From assembly GCA_000320545.1 (NCBI GenBank), contig ADNK01002422.1:1-35517 (forward strand): a stretch of DNA of 35,517 bases. Direction: 5' to 3'. The stretch is from Bigelowiella natans CCMP2755 (Eukaryota; Protista; Cercozoa). Positions 9,070 through 23,340 of this stretch are shown in pieces. Made by a program: the position numbers and the translations under genes. The notes under the pieces are model-generated. The model was not told the origin of the DNA, made no database searches, and worked only from the letters and a program-made list of their open reading frames with translations. Position 1 is the first letter of the stretch, and each line of letters starts with the position of its first letter.

Positions 9070-12000
9070 CTAATCCACTGGCACAAAATCTCTATCGGAG
9101 TTCTGGGACTTCACTCGTGTGAAAGGGGGTCGTGGCCTCATTGAAAGCGGAGGGGGACTCCTCTTAGCACGAGAAACTGGAGCCTTTCGAGAAGGAAGAG
9201 CGGGAGCCTTTCGCGCGGGAAGAGGCGGCGGAGATCTAGCCGAAGTATACTGACGCTTATTGCCAGCTGTATTTGAATGACCTGCTATTTCGAGGTAAAA
9301 ACTATACTTATGCATTTCAATGTAAAAGGTCTTTCTTTTATGATGAGTACCTAATGGTCCTGTGCTGTCAGAATCAATATTATGAAGAGATCCCATCTCC
9401 GACAAGATGTTCCCAGCACTAAGGTCGTTGAGCGACCCCTTGCTGTTGGCATCTCTATCAATGGAAGATGACATACGTGACACCAAATCTCCGGCTTGAT
9501 GCATTATCTTCATGTCAGCATTTTTGCCGAAGTTGCGGTTAAAACTATTGATAGATAAAAGTACGATTAGTTAGGTGACATCCAAAATACTAAATTAGAA
9601 TTCGAAAGTTATCAGACTCGGCAACGCGCTGCTCAGTTTCCTTCTTCTGCTTGTACCATCGTAAAAAACAATATGCACCTAATTTATCAAGACATTCACT
9701 CATTATTTTCGAAGGCTCCGCACAATTTAAATAAGTTTATTGCTACCCAATACAATACAAACAAGAGCCACAAATCCTCCAACGACCCCGCCAATCGTCG
9801 GAGCCATGTCGGTCTCTCCAGACGATCCAGATGAATTATCAAAGGGTCTCAGAATCCTTCACATTTATTAATATCAAGTAAAATATAATGCGTAATGCAT
9901 ATATATAAAAAAAATAGAATTTGTAATTCGCATACGTCGGAGAGACGGTCGGGGAAAACGTAGTAGAGACAATAACATTCTCAGTCCTACCGCCGAAGTC
10001 AAAGCTGGACGATCCTATTGCATGGGTAAGGTAAAGTCGCCATATGAAAATCCATTTTATAAACGCGAAACATTTACATATTTACATATAAGACAAACTT
10101 AAAACATTTATGATTTTTTCCAGCTTCACGGCTGACGGATTACTTCCACATCGATAAACAATATTCACCTTTGATGGTATGGTATTGAATTGCGTCCTCG
10201 GATCCTACCGCCCAGATGAACTAAGACAATTTGTAAATTGAAACTTGTGTAAAACTTCTCCTGATGCTATATATAGGCCTAGAATATTGTATGATTTTAT
10301 TTTTTTGAGAATTAATTTTGACCAAGGTCTCATCTTCAGTGTTATAGGAGTTGAAGTCAAGCACGAGTGGACGTATATACGAGATGTTCGTTATTCCGCC
10401 AATTTCCGTGCAGGACAAGTCCGTGTACAGGTCACTCAGATCACTACTTTCGAAAATTCCGCTGACGCTTTGAGAGAATAAGTTTAAGCTTTAGACAGAA
10501 GAAACACCTAGCGTTTGGAAACAGTCGCATTTTAGTGGAACTTGTTTGCCGATGCTCGTGGAATGTATCAACCATCGCTGGAGCAATACGCGAAGTCAGA
10601 GTGCGCCCCAACCATCTGAGCTTGGGTTTGAGATCTAGAAACGCCGAATCCTATGTAACCGAGCGTCCGTGCAGTGAATTTCATTGAAATGCTGGTGCCT
10701 GACAACCACGCCATGATTTGAATATTATCCTGCATCTTGATCCATCATTCAATCCTCTTTACTAGTATTCATAGGGAGGAATAATACTCACCGTCGTGGG
10801 ACCAGAACATGGTCAGATCAGATGCCAACTCTATACTGCAGCTATATGAATTGGGCTGAAGATCGAAAACTAGACAACCTGGCCAATGAGGAACATAGAA
10901 TCTGTACTTTGCAGAAGTTACAAAGAATGCACATTCATTAAAACTTACGATCGGCAAGTGGCACAGGCGCAAAAGTTGGTGCAAGCCCTAGCTGGACTAC
11001 ATTGTCGGTTCCTCCCCCAAAGCTAATGACAGTGGTTCCTAAGTAGCGATAACACCCGATGATGCGTCTTCTCTTGATTGGAATGTATTAGTGTCAAATG
11101 TCGACCAGAAAAAATGTGGCGTTGCAACAAATCATCTCCATCATCGCCGATAGCCCAAACCACCTAAAACCAGTATTTCATTCGCATTCGACGAACAATT
11201 CTGAGAAGGAATGTATCATTATCAACTTACATTTTGTGGTGTCAGATCGATAGGATTGTCAGTGTCGGAAAGAAACCGCTGGAATTTGATAGTCGTAACC
11301 CTTTATATCCATCATATGAAGCTATGCTTAGTTTATACACCTATGCACTTCACACAAAATGCTACACACCCATTCAACTCAGTGCACGAAACGCCCGTGT
11401 AGTCAATATTATTGTTGACAAGTCCTCTGACGTCCGTTTGGGTGAGCTTGTAGTTAGCGATTATAGCTTGGCCTTTTTCCCAGAGCATAAAGACAATGAA
11501 GACAGTAGATGATTAGCAGGAATATTAGAGTAAGGAATATTTCCTTTTAGACAATTTATTTGTTGCTAGTTTGCAGGTAAGAAGCTCTAACCGTCACTAC
11601 TGCACCAAGCATAATCAGCGTCCGACGGAATCATTGTAGCCGGTGATGTTGGGGAAATGCCCAACCCTAGCCATCCTGATATTATACAGAACGTACAGAA
11701 CGTGGTATTAAACGTGCTTTTCACCATAGGCTAGTGCTACATACCAGTTGTGCGTCCTACAAATTGCATTGATATACGGCTCCCTTTCAAAATAATACAA
11801 TAACACACATATTCATTAATTTTTATGAAAACATACTGAAGGTGTATAGGCTTGAAACGTTTAAATGAATATCACACAATAACTGGTGGAGAAAATGTTA
11901 TTTATTCAGATTAAAGTTGAAAGTTTGTGTCAGTTACCATCATGCGACCAGAAGACTTGGAATGTAGACGTTAGAGACACTGCACATCGGTAAGTTGCGC

Positions 12001-15000
12001 CGCTCAGATCCGTTGAGAAGCAATTTGCACCAGTAGGAGAGGATGGGAATGGCGTGGGGGGCATGGATTGGTCTGGGATCTGCTTATTTGCAACCGGAAT
12101 ATGCGAAAGTCAGCAAACACTTAATACTAAAAACCAGATTGATCAGAGTGAAATTCATTCGTACATACATTGCGTTTTAATTTTTGCCAAAACAATATCG
12201 AATTGTCCCTAGATTCACTAGAAAAGTTTCGACGTTTAGATGGCGCCTAACCTCAATGACTGGAGTTGGAAATGTAGTTGGACGCAGTGTGGGAAGTACA
12301 CTAGTTGGCTCATTCGTCGGTGGGAGGGTGTCCTGCGGCATTTCTGCTGCAGCCTGAAGTTCTCCCCATTCAGGAAGCTCGCCTGTGCAATCTAAACAGT
12401 CCTCGGAAAGGAACCTATTATTCATACATGATGATATACAGTTGTTCTTTCATCGGCGATTTGTTCAGAGTGCTGATGATCTATCAAACTGATATTATCA
12501 GTACCAGTTGCGGCTGCTTTCAACATTTATCGATCTCGCGCTTGATGGCAAGTTATCCTTAAAAACATAAAAAGGGATAATCAACTAGCTAGCATCGGAC
12601 AAAGAATTACGATACGCTGAAGAATTATTCATCATTTTCGCATTAATTATTACATGTCGAATACCATATAGCTTGCACAATCCAAACAGAATCCGTTGAA
12701 CTCCCATCGAGGTGGTGGAGGGTTAAGCGGTTCAGGTAGAGGCAAAAACTCAACCTGCAATAAAGTTTATAATTGAATAGTTCATCAAGCATTAGCAACG
12801 CTGCGAATCTGGGAGCTTTAGTCGATTACCCGCTCAACCAGTGTCCAACACGTCGAATAGAATATTGGATCCTTCACAAGGTCAAACACAAAGAGAATGA
12901 TTAATTCTTTTGTTTGAGAATAATTATCAAAAGGAATCTCGGGACATTCTGCATAGATAAATTGGTATGCCTTTACCTCTGGATCTGCGACGATGAGATA
13001 CTCCGGTAGCGTACGAGTTGGTTGACCTATATTTTCAGGTTCACAACGAAGCTTTCGAAGATAATCTCGGATTGACTCTGCAATTTGCTAACATAAATAT
13101 CATCAACTTACGTGCTTCAACTCCGTAACAGACCCGTGGGATATTTTCGCCGTCCCCCGACATAACAGCTTGAGTTGCCTCTTGGGCACCCGGTATCTAA
13201 AGGTATTACATGAATACGATTGATGTAGACATGAGAACTTCCACATATTTTTGAAATGTAAAAAACCTGAGACCGGTACACATTGATGTCTAAAATCGGC
13301 AAGAATCGATTATTTCCTCGGGCCCGAACGCGTATATATTGTCCTAATGCATATTATATAAAACGAAGCCTTAGTCAACGCCCAATGCTTTGGAAAATGA
13401 AGTACCAGTCTGGCCACCACAGTCAACTTGCAACCCGCATATATTTTCAGAGTACTGTAACAAATAGCGCGAGAAAGGGTTAGAAAATGGATGCAAACAG
13501 AGGCCAAAGAAACAAGTACCCGATCTTGCTGGCAGGTAATGGCGGAATCGATGATACCGCACGTTACTTCCTGTTCCTGGTCGGGACAACTAGTACAGAA
13601 TATCAGATAAATCTTTTGAAAACTCTAAATATGATGAAATGTGGGAAGTTACTCTTGTCCAGAACATGGCGTATTCGAGAGAGAAACAGTCACACCGCCG
13701 TTAAGGAACCTCCCCCAAGCCTATTGAGCAATTGGACACAATTAGATAGGAAAATATATAGACGGCGTCCTGTAAAGGGAAAAGTGGTTAATGCCTGTGT
13801 TGCTCCTTCGGTAAGTCTTCCCTGATTGCCCAATGGAGCAGTCCCAGAGAAGACATCGACGAAGAGATCTAATAGATGTTCCACAGAAGTTATAACGACC
13901 AAGGCTGCCTCTCATTACGAATAAATTCTTAATACCATATTGGTTGGCATTTCTAATCTCAGAGTAATAACTGAGGCCCTCATAGTGACAAACAGGCCTT
14001 TGATTCTAGAACAAATGCACATCAGAGAGTTGATACTATTTGCAGCGGATATCTTCATACCTGGAAGAACCAATACATTGCGCAGTCTAATAAATCAGTA
14101 TTCGTCTCTTTCCTCCCTTCTGGGTACCTCCCTACGTGTAGCGTGGATGGATTATTCAAATAATCGTTTACTCCTCTTACATGGTCGGCTAATACTAGCA
14201 CTGTATTAGATAAATTTGTTACCAAGTTCGAAATCTAGAGCTCCAGGGATTCGTATCGATACAATACCCACGGGGGCAGTAGGATCATCCTTGGGATTAA
14301 CAATAGAGTTTCAGGATTGAATCGTGAGAGAATAAAAATCTGTGCGGTCTAATTGACACATCAGAGGCGCACGTCCAATAATGAGCTACCAGGGTGACTT
14401 GAGACCAAGCCTCTTGCGCTGGAAAAGCAACTGGAACCCATGCCAATGGCATCGCGCTCATTAAATAATCAATTCTTAGCCTACCAGTTATGATAACATT
14501 AATATCACTCCAAGGTTGACACGACGCATTAAATCAGATGATAAGATCAAGTGTGTTTGTATTCTGTCTCACACCAATGAAGGTCAGGACAAATGGCCTC
14601 CTTACCGTCTTCGGACTAACAAAGTAGAGATAGTTGGAAATGAGGGGTTACTGACCAATCAAACCTCTCGTTGCTTTTAAAGCAACTTAGTCATCTAGAA
14701 CTAAACTCACCCCAACGTTAATGAGTACGCCGAACTCTCCAGTCATTGTTGAGATGGTAAACTTCCCATCCGTCACTTCAATTGTATGTGTCTATGGAAA
14801 GCAAACGTTATAAAAAACCAAATTTTAAGTGTATGTTAGGCGAGTAATTGACTAATCTTCAGCAAAGCAATATGAATCTGGCATTCAGTGATATGCATTG
14901 TGGACATATGGTCGGCCGAACCTTTGCGGCATTATTCTGTCTTGCACGACGAGTATGGACTCTAGCATTTTCAAAAATACATCCAGTTATTCTAGCTTGG

Positions 15001-15333
15001 CCAGCGGCTCCCTGTTCAAAGAACCATTTTCCCTCATTCAATTGAATAAATCATTTTGAATCTATTATAGCTTAACGTACCGAAAAATGCGTGATTTGGT
15101 AAACACCGTTTGGTAACTAATTTTATCGTTTTCGAATCAGAGTCCATTGTGATTAGTACAACTAAATCCTTTAGGGTTAGAACTTGAAAAGATACATCAA
15201 CTTCCCAGATTTGTGGCTGGTTGGCACCGCAACGGTTTCTCCTAGCCCAATTCAGTAGGCCTGCCTATTGTACAATATTCAAGCACAGAAACGTATACAA
15301 AGTAATACTTTCACGTAACAGACATACATTGAG

Positions 15334-15374
<41 letters not shown>

Positions 15375-18300
15375 GTACATACACACACACACATACAGAC
15401 ACATATATAAATGTAAACGTATTATATATGGTCTATTCATATTAGTATACAAGCGGATATTTACTACTGAAATTATAAAACAAATATAGACGTTACCCCT
15501 GTTCTTTCTGGAGTTGCGCCATGAGTTACAATATTCTACATTGAGGAAACAGAATAATTCTCATACAACTGATTAAATAAAAAACTGGCATTGTGTCTTC
15601 ACCGGTTCGAAGTTGCTCTGTAATATTTGATCATTTGCTTGACATCTCCATCCATATTGCACAGTTCCATCGTAAGGAGCTACTCCGCCTCTTCCGACTC
15701 CTCCAGGCCATGGCGTCGTTCCCGTTTGAGCTAAATGTGTAGTGTTTAGAAAATAAAGTATTCAACCAAGATTCCGATCGAAATGTGTGACTAAGCAAAA
15801 TTACGATATGCTTTTCCAGTATCGACGATAAATCCGGGAGGCGTTGTCTCAACTCCGTTATAGTTCTCGGGACGGAAATCGAAAAACAGAGTGAACTGTG
15901 GTCCTCCCACCGGGTGCGTAGAGTTTCCTTTTTTCAATCAGTAGTCATCAGATTGGATTGTCTGTAACAGTCTTTTAAACCAGTTCAAATCGGCAGAAGA
16001 GTTACAAAATCGATTATCATTCTAATTCCATTCAAACCTCTAGCCCAGTTCTGTGGGTTCTGAAACCTAAGATGAAGGGGAACCATGGAGTAGCCTTAAG
16101 TGTCTGACATCTTTTGATAAATATCGAAATTGTATACATGCTAATAATGGTATCATATCAGGCTATTTATTTATACACTCGTGCTTGATCATTCTACGTA
16201 CTCTTGATCTTGAGCTTGATTGATTACTCTTCGCTCGAAGACAATCCAATTTGAATCGATCCTATCGTTATAACCCTCTCGGCATGTCTTGAACCTCCAG
16301 CTGATAAAATAAGATGCACACAAGCAAAAATCATTGAACATGTGTGGTGTTCGATATTTAGCGGTGAATAATGTTACATGTTCGGTTCCCTGATCATTCG
16401 CTGCAAATCGGCAACGTTGCTTGGATCGACATCTTGGCCATGCTCCCAGTTTATTCCTCTATGTTAAAAGAAGACCATGATGAGACCGAGTGCCGTCTTC
16501 ACGGACGGGCATGGTATTAATATACGGAGGTTATTCGCATTACACGCAGGTTGGGTCTCCATTGCAAGTGGCTATCGCAGATACAAAAGTATCCCTTGCT
16601 TGAACAGAGCTTAGTAGAAAGGAACAGCAGATTATCGGATACAAACTATATCAATAATTGAAAACACAGGCCTACTTGCGACACTCAATTCCGGGTCTTG
16701 TAGTCTACATGGTTAATGAACTCAATATCAAATAATGGAACTCAACAACTGTGTGACTATAGGCTGAAGAAAATATGACCGAAATCCAAGTAAGTATATC
16801 GTAATCCGAGTGTGTCAAACTATTTGGCGAGGTTAGCCTCATCATCCTAGGTTCGATATATCAAATTACAATTATAATATACTCTAAGAGTACTTGGCAC
16901 TAAGAAAAAAACATTACGGAGAATTTAATGCGATGTCGATATGATCGCGAGGCCATTCAATAACTGCCATCCATCGTATAAATATCAAGAACCTCTGTGA
17001 GGAATAATCGAACGTACTATATTCTCTTTAGAGCAACGTGAATAGCATAGTCAATAAACTTAAGGAATAAGAATATTATAGATTTCATGCATATGTAATC
17101 GGCATACCGTCTGTTTCTGATATCTCGTACTCAAAGCTTGTTGGTAGCGCAACCTTTATAGAATAAATACGTGCAAAGAATATACTCAATATCTCTCAAC
17201 TCTCGCACCCATTTTTTTCATTATTTAGATTACCTCATCCCTTATTGAAGACAAAACAGAATTGGGATTCACAATCGGAACAGCATTTATCCCCTTAAAT
17301 CAAAGCATATGATTTAGAACATAAATCTTTTTTCTCGGAATGAGTTTTTTGGATTTCTACCAAAAGACCAACGCTGCGTATGTTCTCAACACCACTGCCT
17401 GCTGCCACTTGAACATTTGCAAGACACTCCGAAATCTGATAATTAGTATTTTCGTAAGCATTGCTCGTACGATCTAGGTTAGAATTCTATATACAGTATC
17501 CGTGGCGTTGTATATTCCTGATGTAAATCCTTGCGGCTGAACAAAACATAGAGAAGTTTATATCTTCATATATCACGATATTATAACCACTATGCTCTCT
17601 GTTATTTGCAGATTACATATTATTTGAAAATAAAATACATGCTCACCTGTATGAACTGGCAGTGATCAAGGCGGTTGATGTCAAATACTAGAAATGCGAA
17701 AATGATTTAAGAACGAATATTGAGATTGAATTTCAATGTAAGAAATACCCCCGGCCTGCAAGACTCCATAGATATCACTTTCCGGAATGATGGTGCTTTG
17801 CGGATGGACGTTTACCTTTCAATATTAATAGCATTTTTATTAAATAATAGGACAGTAATGATTATATTTGAATTCCTGCTGTACAATAGTTTTTAGAAAC
17901 ATTTCTTACATCAATGGCGTCGTAGTAGCCATTCCATATCCAATGTACAATGTAATGATTTCCTTTGTTCTGAGAGCAATATTGATTGCTAAGATCAAGG
18001 GAGATTTCAAATGATAACAGCAATTTCCCCTAAATCCCTTGAATGGGAATTTAAACTCAAAGAGGACATATTATTCCCAATCAGAAATAATATTTAGTTG
18101 CAAATTCAGGTAATCGAACCGGCTGCAGAGGGATACTCAGACACACAATGTCTTCATCTTGAGGAGCATGGTACAAATTTGGATACTGCATGGCCCCTAC
18201 AATCCAAGGATACTGAAAAATTAAAAGGTAATGCTTTAGCAAAGAATGCTAACTTATGAATAATCTACTAGATTCAAGTTTACATTGTCGTTTTGATAGA

Positions 18301-20586
18301 AAGTATAGATATCATTTGAGCGAGCTTGTGCCGTGTATGAAGTCACCGTCGGAACAGGGAAGGCGCCTTGAATCGTTAAGGTGTCAGTATAGTCACATGG
18401 CTATAATCAGATTATGCTCAATGTTTCAGCCAAAACACACTTACCGTGGTTGCAGTATAAAGAGTCAGAAGGTTGCACCTATGATAGAAGCAACTCATTC
18501 TCTATTCTCGATTTTGAATCAATAGAAACATACTTCGTTTCCATAGATACTCTCAGAGCAACTTGAGCTCGCACAGAAGTGGTATCGAGGGTGCATATCT
18601 TGCTCATTATTGGCTCCAGCAGAAGCTAAGTAATCCCGAACCATGTCGAGGTAATTATTTTGGAATGCATAGTGCTCGTCCTGGTAGTTTTTAATTTGAT
18701 AACAAAGAGAAAAAACCAAAACCCAACATGATGGAACGATAGTTAGTTACAGAAGTAATATGTAAGCAATGACTTTTTCACCACGCTGAATATGCAATCT
18801 CGTTTGGAGAGTACATTCATGTTCCCACATATATGAGTGCTATAAATGCTATTATCAACGGCTTCATATTTTTTTGTTGCTATACAAAATATCATGTTGT
18901 ATCACTTGGCCGGAGAAAATGACAATATAGTGCGTTCGGCCATGCCCAGTAGCGAATTTCATAGCAAACTCTTGGCCACTGCTGACTTGAACATGCGTAT
19001 CGGTCGTGCGTCGCTGATTGAACGGATAGGTGGTGGATGCACCCATGTCAGCTCGTCCAGGAACCTAAGAAATGATAAGATGTGAACGCATTTATCCTGA
19101 ATGCAATAATTATGTATATGCTACAAACTATCAATTGAAAATGCCAACCCACCTTAAAATGGGCATGCATCACACGGTTGATTTATTATTATCGTAGAAA
19201 TAATTTGGATAATCGATTACCAATATCCAGTTGTGCCCCTTAGCAGATTGAGGAAATATGAACAAACTTATGCAGAGGAAACAAGTAAAGATGCTCATTC
19301 CTGGGAACCATTTCAGCGACAATACTGTGTTGAAATGATGGTGACGATGACGAGAGCTTCTACTCATTCCAGTACCAAATGAATATGATTTGTGGGCTAT
19401 GTAACCGAGAAAACCGAATATGGCAAAAAGGAACCTAATTGGAGCCAATTCGTCAATTCTTTACATTAGGTGAATGATAGCAATTCCACTATCAGTGAAA
19501 AGTTCCATAAAAATAAGTATTTCCTATATCAACGGCTAGATAAATTAAACTCTAAACTCTAAACCTACCCAGCTGCGCTCGTATGAACTGTTTTGGTATT
19601 AGAAATCTTGAAGTTGCGAACCTAGAACAAACGGAAAAAAATTACGAAAATAGCTAAATTACAAAAGAATTGCTGGTGATAAGTAATGAAATGTATACCG
19701 GTGCTCTGAACTTTCTTTTCAACGAATCGACGCCGATTGATGACCGAGGTTCTGTTTGATTTAAAATCCACTTTTCCGAGACTTTTTTTGCAGGCATACT
19801 TAACAGAGCAGGTGCTCCCTGTGATCGATGCAACCAAATAGTTAATAGATTGAAAATTTGTTCAAAGGATAGCACTTTTACCGAATTCGATACGCAGAAG
19901 CAGAAACGTGTTGCATCCGGCTGAACATATGGGAGCAAAGCACCTTTATTTCAAGAATGGCTATAGGCAATTTCGAGTTCATGATATAAAAAATGCTTGT
20001 ATATCAACATAGAGTTCAGAGATTGTTTTACGTGGGAAGCCATGCATGCTGATCTCCGTGAATCGATGTCCTGCTGGGCCGAACAGAGAATAGGAGAAGA
20101 CCCGGAAAATCTATCAACTCCGTTATAGTAGCAAGAGTCTCCCTTCGCAGGAGCCACTGCGGCGCATGATGGTTCGTACGGTAGAGGGCATCCGGTAAGG
20201 CTTTCAAATGTTATTTCCATTCCAGTTGGACTGTTTACTCCCATATCGCGTAGCCCCTTTAAGAGTGAGTGGTCAGAGTGAGTATATTGCTTCTAGTACA
20301 TGTTGCGACCTGGAGGTTGCACTGAGCTCCGATGCTGGCACAAAAATCAGTGCAAGACTGTCCTTTCTCAGCTACAAACCAGAACTTACAAATAGTTATA
20401 TTAGGCTTCGAGGGTCTTTTTGGGAGGTAAAAATAATAATGACCTCGTTGGTAGGTGCAACCACGTTCTCGGTGAGGCGCAACTGTTTCAGTATGCGGCC
20501 AGGATATCTGCAATAATTACATTAGTTTGGAAACTTTACATGTATAGCTCAAAGTTCTCTAAGATGTTGAAACGTGTGCTAGTTAT

Positions 20587-20628
<42 letters not shown>

Positions 20629-21875
20629 TTAGAAACATCGAATATAAGAATCTAACCCGCCGATAGGTATCAGTCCTTGGTTCTCCATATAGCCAAAGTT
20701 AAGATCCATTCCATTTGGATAGTAAAAGAAGCCTGCCGCAGTATCACAGAATGATTGTATTGAGCGCAATTCACCTTTTTGACATAAGTACTTACCGTCA
20801 TTTGCAGGGCCAACTTTGATAAGGGCATGGAAATCAATGGTGCCTGTGCCAGCAGGAGGGGCCTGTACGATAATATTGTAACTTAGGAACCAAGAAGTAT
20901 TTACAATTAGTACAGTACCTGAAATCGAAATTCAGTTCTCAGAGGTTTGAGATCTCCCTGCGCATGCATTATGCACTCCCGATTCTGGGTGGGAGTGAAA
21001 AACGTCCGTCCTTGCTGATCTAATGGACAAAACTTTAGTCTTGGATAAAAGGAAGTTCGCAAATATTCTCAGAATAACCATTTCCGGTTGTTCGCCATTG
21101 TCCAACAAGAAATCCATCTAATAGCAGTTTTATTACTTAGCGAAGTAGCGAAGTGATCGATCTTAATGCAACTTAGGAATATTTCACCGCTGTCCTGAGC
21201 CTGGAGCGCAAGACCTCTGTACTTCATCGCGTAAAGTCGAACCTAGAATCAACTTGTTCAATACTACTTCAACAAAAAATGCCAAGTCTTTGTACTTCTA
21301 AGATGACTGTGAGCCACTCGCCGGGCGTGTACGTTGTCTTATCATCCTATGAGCATATTTGGTTAATCCCTTCTACAACAATAACATAATTTTTTTCATA
21401 CTTCTTTGAAACGAAGCTGGAACATGTCTGTATAAACTGGTCTGGCACTCTAAAATATTATGGTTCTTAATATTTATTTCAAATGAAGTGTAACACTGAG
21501 ACCAAACCCATGGCATATTTTTCCCTTGGTCACTGCAATCTAGATGATTGTAAGCCCGCACTGGATCATTATTTCGACTGATGGGAACATAACTCAGCAA
21601 TTTCGATACACATGACATGCACCATTCTCATGCGCGACCTGTACGAAGAGATACTGCAGCCAATGTTGTATTCGGTAGGTCTTACTTGCCAACAGCTCGG
21701 ATTTAATTCATCACCAATGAGACCGCTTGAAGCTCCATCTTAATTTAGTACCATCAATTATTTGTAAACATCTAACTACATAAGTTCATTTTTAGTGAAA
21801 TGAATGCTTCTCACCTACGCCTACAAGTCCAACCAAGAACGCGAATCCAACTGCTATCCGTTCCGTTCCCGTCAT
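9070..21875 (-). CDS. Giant multi-exon (about 75 exons) cell-surface polyprotein: SP, Reeler, Cys module, TM, internal signal peptide, LPMO-like His-brace domain, PAN/CBM/F-lectin-like modules, 2x DOMON, TM, Pro-rich tail
   Basis: ATG at 21875 (MTGTERIAVGFAFLVGLVGV, signal-like), then a chain of GT-AG exons spliced in frame by hand to TAG at 9070-9072. A few junctions around 13450-13750 and 15000-15500 were not fully resolved. One in-frame TAA at 10491-10493. Confidence 0.8.
9660..9805 (-). other. C-terminal transmembrane helix of the giant protein
   Basis: IGGVVGGFVALVCIVL-GAYCFL followed by the basic stop-transfer RWYKQKK. Confidence 0.8.
10000..10880 (-). other. DOMON domain 2 with putative heme ligands Met (10615-10613) and His (10181-10179)
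   Basis: YSCSIELASDLTMFWSHDG-TSISMKFTARTLGYIGFGVS....QMVGA...ITNISYIR...FIWAVG...QYH; several intron positions are shared with DOMON1. Confidence 0.85.
11020..12040 (-). other. DOMON domain 1 with putative heme ligands Met (11634-11632) and His (11118-11116)
   Basis: YRCAVSLTSTFQVFWSHDG-SRISMQFVGRTTG-WLGLGISPTSPATMIPSD..W...TTIKFQR...VVWAIG...QRH. Confidence 0.85.
13268..14330 (-). other. F-type-lectin/discoidin-like module (divergent)
   Basis: GVTVSLSNTPC...VTCG...VDCGGQT-GQYIRVRARGNNRFLPILDINVY resembles the fucolectin/FTP C-terminal pattern xCxxxxGrYvxv......LxlxEvxVy. Confidence 0.5.
14710..15930 (-). other. Galactose-binding-like/malectin-type CBM module
   Basis: FFDFRPE..PPGFIVDTGKAY...YGW...IWE..LPNGVYQIT...IEVTDGKFTIS motifs. 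Confidence 0.55.
17800..19235 (-). other. LPMO-like (histidine-brace) copper domain starting at the His codon 19235-19233
   Basis: SAKG/HNWIL-VPGRA...GQEFAMKFATGH(46)GRTHYIVI ... VCLSIPLQP-NKGNHYIVHWIWNGYYDAID-VNV. The final strands parallel the AA10 pattern xPxxxGxHvIxxxW...FYxxxDVn. Confidence 0.65.
19882..20388 (-). other. Cys-rich module resembling the MGAT5/GnT-V C-terminal domain
   Basis: WFVAEKGQSCTDFCASIGAQC...C..SC...P....CYY...SACMASH-PDATRFCFC compared with the MGAT5-type pattern GQSCxxxC...LxC ... SCAGxHPxxxRxCPC. Confidence 0.55.
20720..21440 (-). other. Reeler domain exons of the giant gene
   Basis: Spliced TYTPGEWLTVILE-VRLYAMKYRGLALQAQDS-DGFLVGQW...ECIMHAQGDLKP..EFRFQ-APPAGTGTIDFHALIK matches the Reeler pattern YxPG..V....xGxxLQA..vG.w..C..H....K....APxxGxGxxxFxA. 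Confidence 0.8.
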
Positions 21876-21959
21876 TATCCTGAATCTGTTTCGTGAATGG
21901 CAGTTAGCCTGTGCACTCAAAGGAAGCCAGGTGCAGTTTACTGTGCTTCTGAAAATTAG

Positions 21960-23340
21960 ACACGCGAGTTTTGTTTTCGATCGGTTGTGTTGCCAACAAA
22001 AGAGTGGCCATGCGGCGTTTCATGCGCGTTTTTCCCTTGTCGCGCACAGAATACGGCCTTGTCCTGCCTCGAAATTCATCAAATGCTAGAGGTTTTGTTG
22101 TGCTGCTAGATCAGAAAAAACCGTGCCTCGCACTCATCCAGTTGCGACCGTTAGACTCGAATCGTTTCTTGGTATCTTGTCGCGAACGATGAATTCAGGC
22201 TGGTTTTGCAGCGACGTAGCAGCCTACCAGCAAGTGCAGACAACTTCTGGAAGTGTGCAGTGGGTTGGTGGGCTTGTCGCAGAGGCAAGCGCTGTTGCCA
22301 GAGGCAGTTTTGCATCGATGCTTCACTCATTGTTCACTCTTCATTGTTCATTGCCAGCAATGGAATCCTTTTTTCACGAGTTGGCATGCACTTCAAGCAA
22401 GCTGTTTCACTTGTTCTGTGGAGGTTTGTTCATCGTTAGCAGGAATCCACTCCCAGAGCTCACGCACGAGGTCACGATGGTGTGAACTGGGATCCTTTCA
22501 ACTACTTCCTGTGGAATTGCATCACTTGTTCCATCAACTCACTCATTTGTCGACTTGCTCGCTTCTCTCGTGCTGGCGTGTCGTTGCATTGACTCGTTCG
22601 TGACACGCAACACCGCGTGCAACCACGTCATTGTTCACTTCCAGCAAACAACGCGTTTGAAGACACTGCATGCACTCATTCTGATCTGGCACTCGTTCGC
22701 TCGGTTGTTCACATTGATTGTGATGACTTTCCGTGCATCCTTGTGAAAACATGGCGATTTGGCAGTGCCAGAGTGTGCGGGCCAGCGGCCCCCAACTTCA
22801 CCAGAACATGCCTGCTTGCAAACTGGCACAAGCCCTCCAGCCAGGCACTGCGCCTTCCATGCTGCGCTGACAATGCGTGCCCGAACAGAACAAGCACAAG
22901 ACCAGTTCACGCTGGCACGCTGGCACGCGCGCCAGTCTAGCAGTGGGGAAGATGGAATTTGCTCAAGAAAAGCCAATGCCACACGGCGAGAGATGCAGTG
23001 CTGAGGCGGCACAATCTACTAGTCTAGACAATGTGGCACAATCCGACAATCTCTAGAATCTAGCAATGGTGGGAATGCGTCTTGCATGCTGTGCCATGCT
23101 AGCATGCATGGACGCATGTCCATTGTGCATGAGCGCACAAACCCGTCTCGCACGTGCGTCCACAGGCGTGTAGGACGATCTTCTTCAGATGTTCACTGCA
23201 TGAACCATATTGCACAGTCACAATTTTGTGCAAGCAAGGCACAGCTGTTTTGCCGCAATCTAGACACCATCGATGTGCAGAGTTGCATTAGCACAAAATT
23301 GCTCGAAACGATGTTACCACAGAAGCGACAAAGATCGGAA
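21960..23340. other. Second strongly TpA-depleted intergenic island
   Basis: Between about 22505 and 23016 only one TpA was found, inside CTAG (about 22937-22940). CA/TG-rich; CpG present. Confidence 0.8.

What the first reader, a model, noticed from the sequence alone, without database searches (positions are those of the whole stretch)
19221..19621. Internal second signal peptide positioned to release an N-terminal histidine in mid-protein
Seen: exon ...TSAAG splices in frame (GG+A, acceptor 19459-19460) into IDELAPIRFLFAIFGFLGYIA (hydrophobic segment 1), a basic/His-rich loop (RSSRHRHHH), then MSIFTCFLCISLFIFPQSAKG followed directly by HNW. A-K-G fits the -3/-1 signal-peptidase rule. Established: a His brace needs the free alpha-amine of His1, so LPMO domains normally follow the N-terminal signal peptide. 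Inference: a TM hairpin cleaved by signal peptidase, as in viral polyproteins, yields two co-expressed membrane proteins (a Reeler part and a copper-enzyme part) from one gene.
Basis: partly seen in the sequence, partly recalled or inferred. Interest (0 to 1): 0.85.

Follow-up and report, generated by a model that had tools for sequence, protein, structure and literature searches.

The report
Internal signal peptide exposing mid-protein histidine
One gene of the alga Bigelowiella natans places a membrane hairpin and a second, textbook signal peptide in the middle of a long protein, so that signal peptidase should free the N-terminal histidine of a copper-enzyme-like domain; the same layout recurs in at least 75 related protein clusters, but the cut itself has not been shown.

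Summary
Spliced RNA contigs from three studies join the upstream exon (…TSAAG) in frame to the exon that carries hydrophobic segment 1, a basic His-rich loop, MSIFTCFLCISLFIFPQSAKG and then HNW. The acceptor is at 19436-19435, not 19460-19459, so IDELAPIR is not in the mRNA. The intron removes an in-frame TAG that overlaps the donor.

The layout is not a splicing oddity.
- Two paralogues in the same genome (Bigelowiella natans) have it, and one of them has it in a single uninterrupted ORF.
- Among 126 representative homologues aligned from domain residue 1, all start with His.
- In 36 of them the His follows a plain N-terminal signal peptide. In 75 it lies 100 or more residues into the protein.
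- All 75 internal sites have A, G or S at -1 and A, V, T, C, S or G at -3. They have a roughly 12-residue hydrophobic core, frequent Pro at -5/-4, usually a TM segment upstream, and a short loop that is mostly net positive.

The domain has no Pfam family. Its model best matches His-brace proteins (X325, AA15 and others) at only moderate Z (5.4-7.6), with His aligned to their residue 1.

Cleavage by signal peptidase is strongly inferred, not shown. No paper describing it was found. The scan's other notes on this gene (s1-744412, s1-744463) are consistent with this reading.

The parts
21815..21875 (-). Start codon (21875) and N-terminal signal peptide MTGTERIAVGFAFLVGLVGV of the precursor. It puts the Reeler-like part in the ER lumen or outside the cell.
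   Evidence: The RNA contig's 5' end lies at 21954-21971.
19699..21738 (-). Exons of the first ectodomain: a Reeler-like domain (…APPAGTGTIDFHALIKVGPANDG…) and a Cys-rich module (…GCPLPYEPSCAAVAPAKGDSCYYNG…ATRFCFC…).
   Evidence: Introns come from RNA. The rest were solved under the contig-length and open-frame constraints. Reeler PF02014 is found in homologues. The Cys-rich module resembles the GnT-V C-terminal region.
19569..19621 (-). Last exon before the hairpin, VRNFKISNTKTVHTSAA + GG. It supplies the first two bases of the Gly codon completed by 19434.
19435..19568 (-). 134-nt GT-AG intron. Its first bases, G|TAG, create an in-frame stop (TAG 19565-19567) if it is not spliced out. Its removal fuses the two halves.
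   Evidence: Joint 19432>19567 (cut +2) in contigs of X1, X8 and X13. Sequence checked.
19395..19433 (-). Hydrophobic segment 1 (TM1, stop-transfer): (SAAG)FLFAIFGFLGYIA.
   Evidence: An equivalent TM1 is present in 63 of 75 internal homologues and in L002 and L003.
19296..19394 (-). Loop predicted to face the cytosol, 33 aa, net +5 and six His: HKSYSFGTGMSRSSRHRHHHFNTVLSLKWFPGM. It acts as the n-region of the internal signal peptide.
   Evidence: In the family the loop is net positive in 54 of 75 cases, median length 8 aa.
19236..19295 (-). Internal signal-peptide core: h-region SIFTCFLCISLFIF (14 aa) and c-region PQSAKG, with A at -3 and G at -1.
19221..19235 (-). HNWIL. The His codon at 19233-19235 is the predicted new N-terminus. 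The predicted signal-peptidase cut lies between 19236 and 19235.
   Evidence: His is invariant at this position in 126 of 126 homologues.
17870..19064 (-). Remaining exons of the HNW (LPMO-like) domain: 18906-19064, 18534-18680, 18445-18478, 18284-18366, 18120-18212 and 17969 downwards. They include ATGHG (the second conserved His) and HYIVHWIWNGYYDAIDV.
   Evidence: Introns from RNA, translation, conserved columns, fold.
9073..17869 (-). Rest of the same mRNA: lectin-like and DOMON-like modules, a C-terminal TM (…GGVVGGFVALVCIVLG…) and a Pro-rich tail. This would make the C-terminal product a type I membrane protein. The exon structure here was not solved.
   Evidence: The contig continues below 17104. 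The DOMON hint is weak. The profile matches an F-type lectin and the yxiM protein 2o14.

Best explanation
This is one gene of Bigelowiella natans that encodes a cellular polyprotein.

**Proposed route through the membrane**
1. The N-terminal signal peptide sends a Reeler-like plus Cys-rich ectodomain into the ER lumen.
2. A first hydrophobic segment stops transfer.
3. A short, basic loop stays in the cytosol.
4. A second hydrophobic segment has the length and c-region of a cleavable signal peptide (14-residue core, P-Q-S-A-K-G). It restarts translocation.
5. The signal peptidase complex cuts after Gly. His482 of the precursor becomes residue 1 of an LPMO-like domain.

**Products**
- The N-terminal product is hairpin-anchored.
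- The C-terminal product begins with His. It carries the His-brace-like domain and lectin-like and DOMON-like modules, and it ends in its own TM anchor.

**What is shown and what is inferred**
- Shown: the single spliced mRNA and open frame, and the conservation of the layout.
- Inferred: the cleavage, the topology and the copper chemistry.
For: **RNA and reading frame**
- One spliced contig covers both halves in three studies. The key joint removes the TAG.
- All listed introns are GT-AG.
- The exon model matches the contig length and is open for 691 codons across the junction.

**Paralogues in the same genome**
- L002 has the whole arrangement in a single ORF, and L003 has it too.
- The L002 transcript ORF is 'complete', with an N-terminal SP and the His at residue 447.
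- A fourth paralogue has a plain N-terminal SP directly before HNW.

**Family**
- 233 hits at E<=1e-3.
- 126 of 126 have His at domain residue 1. In 36 it follows an N-terminal SP and in 75 it is internal.

**Internal sites**
- Residue -1 is A64/G7/S4. Residue -3 is A41/V14/T9/C7/S3/G1. Pro is common at -5/-4. The h-region spans -17..-6.
- Upstream identity is only 0.18 against 0.44 downstream, so only the cleavage-rule positions are held.
- A PSSM trained on the N-terminal SPs scores internal sites like N-terminal ones (7.5 vs 6.7) and decoys at -20.
- Loops are net positive in 54 of 75.

**Fold**
- AF2 predicts two helices just before the His and a confident beta-sandwich.
- The best structural matches are His-brace proteins, with the His on their residue 1.

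**Feasibility**
- SPC cleaves internal signal sequences in the LepCCt(14L) model substrate, which has a 46-aa n-region and a 14-Leu h-region (PMC13578380).
- h-region length is an obvious difference between cleaved signal peptides and uncleaved signal anchors (PMC2120157).
Against: - No protein-level evidence exists: no N-terminal peptide and no size shift.
- No SignalP run was possible. My small PSSM scores the window's own site only -4.0 and L003's -13.5, though both obey the -3/-1 rule.
- The window's loop is unusually long (33 aa) and holds two Met codons (MSRSS, MSIFTC), so a minor internally initiated product cannot be excluded.
- Raw RNA reads were too few (3) to show starts or isoform ratios.
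- Structural matches to LPMOs are moderate (Z 5.4-7.6, below the tool's caution line of 8). Pfam LPMO_10 does not match.
Confidence: 0.75

Rival explanations
1. The protein is an uncleaved three-pass membrane protein. The second hydrophobic segment is a permanent TM helix and the His works as an internal residue, so there is no His brace needing a free amine.
For: The cleavage was never observed. The fold match to LPMOs is only moderate and there is no LPMO Pfam hit. Rare DNW variants (P0047, P0103, P0126) show that the domain can exist without the His.
Against: - The hydrophobic core is only about 12-14 residues, short for a stable span.
- The residues at -1 and -3 are 100% signal-peptidase-compatible in 75 internal representatives, while the rest of the segment drifts.
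- The same domain starts exactly at the cleavage site of ordinary N-terminal signal peptides in 36 representatives and in a paralogue of the same genome.
- The DNW variants keep the small -3/-1 motif too.
Confidence: 0.12
2. There are effectively two genes. The Reeler protein ends at the TAG (intron retained, or polyadenylated upstream), and the copper-domain protein is made from its own promoter or start at MSRSS or MSIFTC. The fused mRNA is a minor read-through.
For: An in-frame TAG directly follows TSAAG. Two Met codons lie in the loop. From MSIFTC onward the segment would be a normal N-terminal signal peptide. The contigs cannot give isoform ratios or transcript starts.
Against: - The only form assembled in three studies is the spliced fusion, at contig depths of 22-49.
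- The acceptor at 19435 opens an exon that begins with TM1, which makes sense only as a continuation of the upstream ORF.
- L002 has no intron or stop at this point, and its complete transcript ORF is fused.
- 22 of 75 homologues have no Met at -60..-13.
Confidence: 0.06
3. The precursor is cut near the His by another protease (signal peptide peptidase, rhomboid or a proprotein convertase), not by signal peptidase.
For: Nothing specific. It only accounts for the need for a free N-terminus.
Against: No dibasic motif is conserved. Position -2 is variable, and -1/-3 follow the signal-peptidase rule exactly. An intramembrane protease would not leave His as residue 1.
Confidence: 0.03

Closest known systems
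Viral glycoprotein polyproteins processed by host signal peptidase (bunyavirus Gn/Gc, flavivirus prM/E, pestivirus and hepacivirus envelope regions)
   Same: A lumenal domain, a TM segment, a short cytosolic loop and an internal signal peptide whose cleavage creates the N-terminus of the next membrane protein. Both products come from one ORF (reviews PMC4974537 and PMC7926653, listed; I read only their abstracts).
   Different: This is a cellular nuclear gene with more than 25 spliceosomal introns. It is conserved as a gene family in chlorarachniophytes, the cercozoan Mataza and many unnamed environmental eukaryotic sequences. The selective reason appears to be chemical (a free His1 amine), not genome economy.
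LepCC / LepCCt(14L) model substrates for the ER signal peptidase complex
   Same: An internal signal sequence with a long n-region (46 aa) and a 14-residue hydrophobic core plus a cleavage cassette. It is cleaved by SPC in vivo (PMC13578380). The window's h-region is also 14 residues.
   Different: LepCC is an engineered reporter. The window's arrangement is natural and conserved.
LPMO and LPMO-like His-brace proteins (AA15 TdAA15A 5msz; X325 LaX325 6ibh; AA10, AA9, AA11, AA13, AA16)
   Same: - His is the first residue after a signal-peptide cleavage site.
- Further conserved His residues are present (…ATGH…).
- The C-terminal motif H..HW.W.GYYD..DV recalls AA10. That resemblance is from my memory, not from a test here.
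- The domain is a beta-sandwich. The best structural hits align the His to residue 1 of these chains.
   Different: - There is no sequence-level match to PF03067 or to any PDB LPMO.
- Z is only 5.4-7.6.
- The HNW start and the early second His are unlike the characterised families.
- Roughly 60% of representatives carry the domain mid-protein, which to my knowledge has not been reported for any LPMO family.
Reeler-domain proteins (PF02014; spondin and ferric-chelate-reductase-type proteins)
   Same: The upstream ectodomain of homologues matches PF02014 (9 of 36, best E 1.2e-9). The family profile gives a marginal spondin-1 match.
   Different: The window's own exon pieces give no Pfam hit. The domain is fused to a Cys-rich module resembling the C-terminal region of GnT-V.

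Membership tests
Cleavable (type I signal peptidase) signal peptide | Small uncharged residues at -1 and -3 | tested here: met
   Window: A at -3, G at -1. L002 has A/A and L003 has V/A. In 75 of 75 internal homologues -1 is A, G or S and -3 is A, V, T, C, S or G.
Cleavable (type I signal peptidase) signal peptide | Short hydrophobic h-region (about 7-15 residues) followed by a polar c-region, often with a helix breaker | tested here: met
   Window: SIFTCFLCISLFIF (14 aa) then PQSAKG. In the family the hydrophobic fraction is at least 0.67 from -17 to -6, and Pro is the commonest residue at -5 and -4.
Cleavable (type I signal peptidase) signal peptide | Positively charged n-region on the cytosolic side | tested here: met
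   Window loop net +5. Net charge is above 0 in 54 of 75 homologues and below 0 in 4.
Cleavable (type I signal peptidase) signal peptide | Actual cleavage by the signal peptidase complex | not testable with these tools
   It needs N-terminal sequencing or an in vitro translocation assay. No SignalP was available.
LPMO / His-brace copper proteins | His as residue 1 of the mature protein | tested here: met
   In 36 representatives and one B. natans paralogue the His directly follows an N-terminal signal peptide. For internal members this holds only if the predicted cut occurs.
LPMO / His-brace copper proteins | A second conserved His and an axial Tyr/Phe positioned at the copper site | tested here: inconclusive
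   Invariant His residues lie at domain positions 30 and 47, and the GYYD Tyr residues are nearly invariant. Their geometry could not be measured because no model coordinates were available.
LPMO / His-brace copper proteins | Immunoglobulin-like beta-sandwich LPMO fold | tested here: inconclusive
   X325 scores Z 7.6 and AA15 Z 7.5, and AA9, 10, 11, 13 and 16 are among the top 50, all with model His112 on their residue 1. Z is below 8, however, and pilin and Ig-like folds score similarly. Foldseek gave E>0.04.
LPMO / His-brace copper proteins | Sequence membership in a described family (PF03067 LPMO_10 or others) | tested here: not met
   No Pfam hit at E<=1. There was no PDB hit by sequence or by profile. 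The only lead is a language-model one to clusters in which 13-23% of members carry LPMO_10.
LPMO / His-brace copper proteins | Copper binding and oxidative activity | not testable with these tools
   It needs recombinant protein, EPR/ITC and activity assays.
Reeler domain (PF02014) | Match to the Pfam model above its gathering score | tested here: inconclusive
   The window's exon pieces give no hit. Homologue P0004 scores 27.7 bits against a cut-off of 21, and 9 of 36 family members match. The spliced window protein was not searched as a whole.

The most novel reading that the evidence does not exclude
The HNW domain is a previously undescribed family of His-brace copper proteins. Eukaryotic cells have evolved a general way to encode such a domain in the middle of a gene: a TM hairpin whose second helix is a signal-peptidase substrate. 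If so, this would be a conserved cellular polyprotein processed by signal peptidase. It would deliver, in a 1:1 ratio, a Reeler-type ectodomain and a copper/DOMON redox ectodomain to the same membrane.
Probability: 0.55. Interest if true: 0.85.

Novelty: new variant of a known kind. Interest (0 to 1): 0.78.

Why it matters
- **For LPMO surveys.** LPMO-type domains are taken to be obligatorily N-terminal, because the copper is held by the alpha-amine of His1. Genome surveys therefore look for them right after the N-terminal signal peptide. This family shows a natural route round that rule, so mid-protein His-brace domains may be missed systematically.
- **For membrane-protein biogenesis.** It would be a conserved, non-viral set of substrates in which signal peptidase cuts an internal signal sequence behind a TM segment. 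That offers natural substrates for a question now studied mostly with engineered reporters and a few yeast proteins with extended n-regions (PMC13578380).
- **For function.** It links a Reeler domain, a copper-type domain and DOMON-like modules in one precursor. This suggests a cell-surface redox system in chlorarachniophytes and related protists.

Tried and rejected
- **Pfam on the window's exon pieces.** Nothing useful came up for either half. Pfam and PDB sequence searches on the intron-free paralogue domain also found nothing.
- **Foldseek against PDB.** No hit at E<=0.001. The VIA-align wide search was needed.
- **Raw RNA reads (X19).** Only 3 reads were laid, so there is no information on transcript starts, strand or isoform ratio.
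Rejected in favour of 19436-19435, on the RNA joint.
- **My PSSM from 29 N-terminal signal peptides.** It separates the classes well overall but is too noisy for single sites. The window scores -4.0 and L003 -13.5, so I do not lean on it for the window itself.
- **The window's own protein.** It was not found in the protein libraries.
- **The spliced model.** It was never sent to a search or fold tool. Exons were searched by reference only, and homologues with ids stood in for the whole protein. The exons were joined only inside local scripts, to check frame and mRNA length.
- **Literature.** Searches for LPMO + internal signal peptide, His brace + Reeler, and LPMO + Bigelowiella returned nothing.
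Full report
**1. What is in the sequence.**
The feature lies on the minus strand. An exon at 19569-19621 reads VRNFKISNTKTVHTSAA and ends with GG. The next bases are G|TAGGT, so without splicing the frame ends TSAAG-TAG (stop at 19565-19567).

The following exon, 19221-19434, encodes these parts in order:
- FLFAIFGFLGYIA;
- a 33-residue loop, HKSYSFGTGMSRSSRHRHHHFNTVLSLKWFPGM (net +5, six His);
- SIFTCFLCISLFIF-PQSAKG;
- HNWIL.

After a GT-AG intron the next exon continues VPGRADMG….

**2. RNA evidence.**
The stretch is held by runs of one organism from several studies, at about 0.37 of its words, which is roughly the exonic share. I laid contigs of three of those runs, each from a different study, on 17000-22000.
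- One contig (6433 nt in X1, 6348 nt in X8) lies on the minus strand. It skips at least 28 introns. All 15 that were listed are GT-AG.
- The joint 19432>19567 (cut +2) gives intron 19435-19568. The donor is GG|GTAGGT and the acceptor is TTAG| at 19436-19435.
The frame is the same, so the mRNA reads TSAAG|FLFAIF and IDELAPIR is intronic.
- The contig begins at 21954-21971 and continues well below 17104.

I solved the unlisted introns under two constraints, the contig's own coordinates and an open frame. The resulting model reproduces the contig length exactly (1843 nt from 21954 to 18534). It is open from the ATG at 21875 for 691 codons, and the His is residue 482. The N-terminus, MTGTERIAVGFAFLVGLVGV, is signal-peptide-like.

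The joined model was built only in local scripts for these frame checks. It was not sent to any search or fold tool.

The raw-read run gave only 3 reads. Transcript starts, isoform ratios and intron retention therefore remain untested.

**3. The organism and its paralogues.**
The genome (91.4 Mb) encodes, at 100% identity, a protein that a public source labels Bigelowiella natans (JGI model 89998). The nearest homologues are from Lotharella and Amorphochlora.

A six-frame search with the 53-aa core exon found two paralogues.
- **L002.** One uninterrupted ORF runs from the Cys-rich module (…GCPLPYKPSCASVAPA…RRFCPCK…) through AAFAPAILFAVMGLLGA, RGGALFRG and ASPALTAATAFLLQARPAAA into HNWLRSPGR. 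There is no intron here, so the fusion cannot be a splicing artefact. The matching MMETSP transcript ORF (P0183) is flagged complete and is 1795 aa long. It starts with the signal peptide MRRIEQIAVWVLCLGAIASLT and has the His at residue 447.
- **L003.** It reads IAMPVVLLAGCLAAAASSL, RAFRHNGG, SSLLVLMTFVGMQPVKA | HNWLHSRGR.
- **A fourth paralogue, on contig C1412.** It has a plain N-terminal signal peptide: MSFFGVFCILLPLAPCTSS | HNWILSPSRS.

**4. The family.**
I searched 1.84 billion representative proteins with the intron-free HNW exon of L002, using HMMER. This gave 233 hits at E<=1e-3. Of the best 150, 126 align from query residue 1, and all 126 have His there (HNW or HTW).

| Position of the His | Representatives |
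|---|---|
| Residue 35 or earlier, directly behind an N-terminal signal peptide | 36 |
| Between residues 36 and 99 | 15 |
| Residue 100 or later (typically 270-570) | 75 |

The 75 internal sites share these features:
- Residue -1 is A (64), G (7) or S (4).
- Residue -3 is A (41), V (14), T (9), C (7), S (3) or G (1).
- Pro is the commonest residue at -5 and -4.
- The hydrophobic fraction is 0.67-0.85 from -17 to -6.
- Charged residues reach about 20% of sites at -21 and -22.
- Mean pairwise identity of the 20 upstream residues is 0.18, against 0.44 for the 20 downstream. Only the positions named by the signal-peptidase rule are held.
- 63 of 75 have a further hydrophobic 17-mer upstream (TM1).
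- The loop between the two segments has a median length of 8 residues. It is net positive in 54, neutral in 17 and negative in 4.

A weight matrix trained on the N-terminal signal peptides scores the internal sites like the N-terminal ones (7.5 vs 6.7, leave-one-out). Decoy positions score -20.4. The true site ranks first within its own protein in 33 of 75 cases.

22 of the 75 have no Met anywhere from -60 to -13, so internal initiation is not the general way to make the domain.

Three representatives have Asp instead of His (DNW). They keep the same -3/-1 motif, and one of them is internal.

**5. What the two halves are.**
*Upstream half.* Pfam Reeler matches 9 of 36 internal-type homologues (best E 1.2e-9). 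The Cys-rich module matches the C-terminal region of GnT-V structures at E 3.5e-4 by profile.

*Downstream half.* The HNW domain has no Pfam family and no PDB relative by sequence. I predicted an AF2 model of the 374-aa homologue P0072 from a 60-row alignment.
- Mean pLDDT is 71.7, and several 10-residue blocks of the core average above 90.
- Two helices (53-85 and 90-104) lie just before His112, followed by a beta-sandwich.
- Foldseek found nothing significant.
- The exhaustive VIA-align search ranked LaX325 (Z 7.6) and AA15 (Z 7.5) first. AA13, AA9, AA11, AA16 and AA10 entries were also in the top 50. In nearly all of these rows model His112 aligns with the first residue of the solved mature chain.
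- Z is below the tool's caution line of 8, and pilin-like Ig folds score similarly. I treat the fold assignment as probable, not proven.
- Two Atlas look-ups point the same way, weakly.

Conserved columns include His1, Asn2, Trp3, two further invariant His residues (domain positions 30 and 47) and the motif W.W.GYYD..D.

**6. Mechanism.**
The order of topogenic signals predicts the following:
- The first ectodomain is lumenal.
- TM1 acts as a stop-transfer segment.
- The basic loop is cytosolic.
- The second segment re-initiates translocation, with its C-terminal end in the lumen.

This brings the A-K-G|H bond to the signal peptidase active site. The SPC substrate LepCCt(14L) has a 14-residue core like the window's and a 46-residue n-region, and it is cleaved in yeast (PMC13578380). 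An obvious difference between cleaved signal peptides and uncleaved anchors is the length of the h-region (PMC2120157).

Cleavage would yield two products:
- a hairpin-anchored Reeler/Cys-rich protein;
- a type I membrane protein that starts with His1. Its C-terminal TM (…GGVVGGFVALVCIVLG…) and Pro-rich tail are visible as ORF pieces.

The steps from topology onward are inference.

**7. Comparison and novelty.**
Functionally this is the logic of viral glycoprotein polyproteins (bunyavirus and flavivirus type). Here it is in an intron-rich cellular gene family found in chlorarachniophytes, the cercozoan Mataza and many unnamed environmental eukaryote sequences.

I found no paper linking LPMOs or His braces with internal signal peptides or Reeler domains. 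[quoted passage not shown]

I class the finding as a new variant of known kinds: internal signal-peptidase processing, and His-brace domains.

**8. Verdict.**

| Claim | My estimate |
|---|---|
| One gene, one ORF | near certain |
| Signal-peptidase cleavage immediately before the His | about 0.8 |
| His-brace copper site | about 0.6 |

Intron retention would therefore give a truncated, unanchored Reeler protein, and this remains to be tested.

Noticed in passing
window 19565-19568: The stop codon TAG overlaps the splice donor (GG|GTAGGT). Retaining this 134-nt intron would end the protein at TSAAG and give a Reeler/Cys-rich protein without any membrane anchor. This could be a splicing switch between a soluble form and the polyprotein form.
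   Followed up: no
window 19882-20395 (Cys-rich module); family profile positions 83-179 of A1: The Cys-rich module between the Reeler domain and the hairpin (…GQSC…C…CxxP…CS…P…GxCYY…RxCxC) matches the C-terminal region of GnT-V/MGAT5 structures (E 3.5e-4). One family member hits Pfam Glyco_transf_18.
   Followed up: partly
G000:C1412:54000-60200 (L008, L009, L011): This is a fourth B. natans paralogue of the HNW domain (JGI model 89998). It has a plain N-terminal signal peptide in MMETSP transcripts. The JGI model adds a 75-aa N-terminal extension, which is probably a mis-called start.
   Followed up: partly
P0047, P0103, P0126 (homologues): These variants have Asp in place of the N-terminal His (DNW) but keep the signal-peptidase motif. 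They may be non-catalytic relatives.
   Followed up: no
window 10571-10744 and 11590-11730: Two exon pieces have the DOMON-like signature G(W/Y)(L/I)G(L/F)G(I/V)S…(A/C)SSDG. Pfam DOMON scores only E 0.025, below its cut-off, on one piece. The family profile also matches the F-type lectin FBP32 and the hypothetical protein yxiM (2o14) further downstream.
   Followed up: partly
window 20578-20635: A (TA)n microsatellite lies inside an intron of the gene. The reads tool skipped it as a repeat.
   Followed up: no
window 20396-20443: One low-depth X13 contig runs unspliced into the intron that I placed at 20385-20443. Either the intron is retained in that contig, or my choice among equal-length solutions for this gap is wrong. 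This does not affect the frame at the hairpin.
   Followed up: partly
L006 (G000:C1624) 1-1708: The L002 paralogue ends with a long Pro/Thr-rich (mucin-like) linker, a C-terminal TM and, a WW-domain hit in its transcript product. Its tail therefore differs from that of the window's gene.
   Followed up: no
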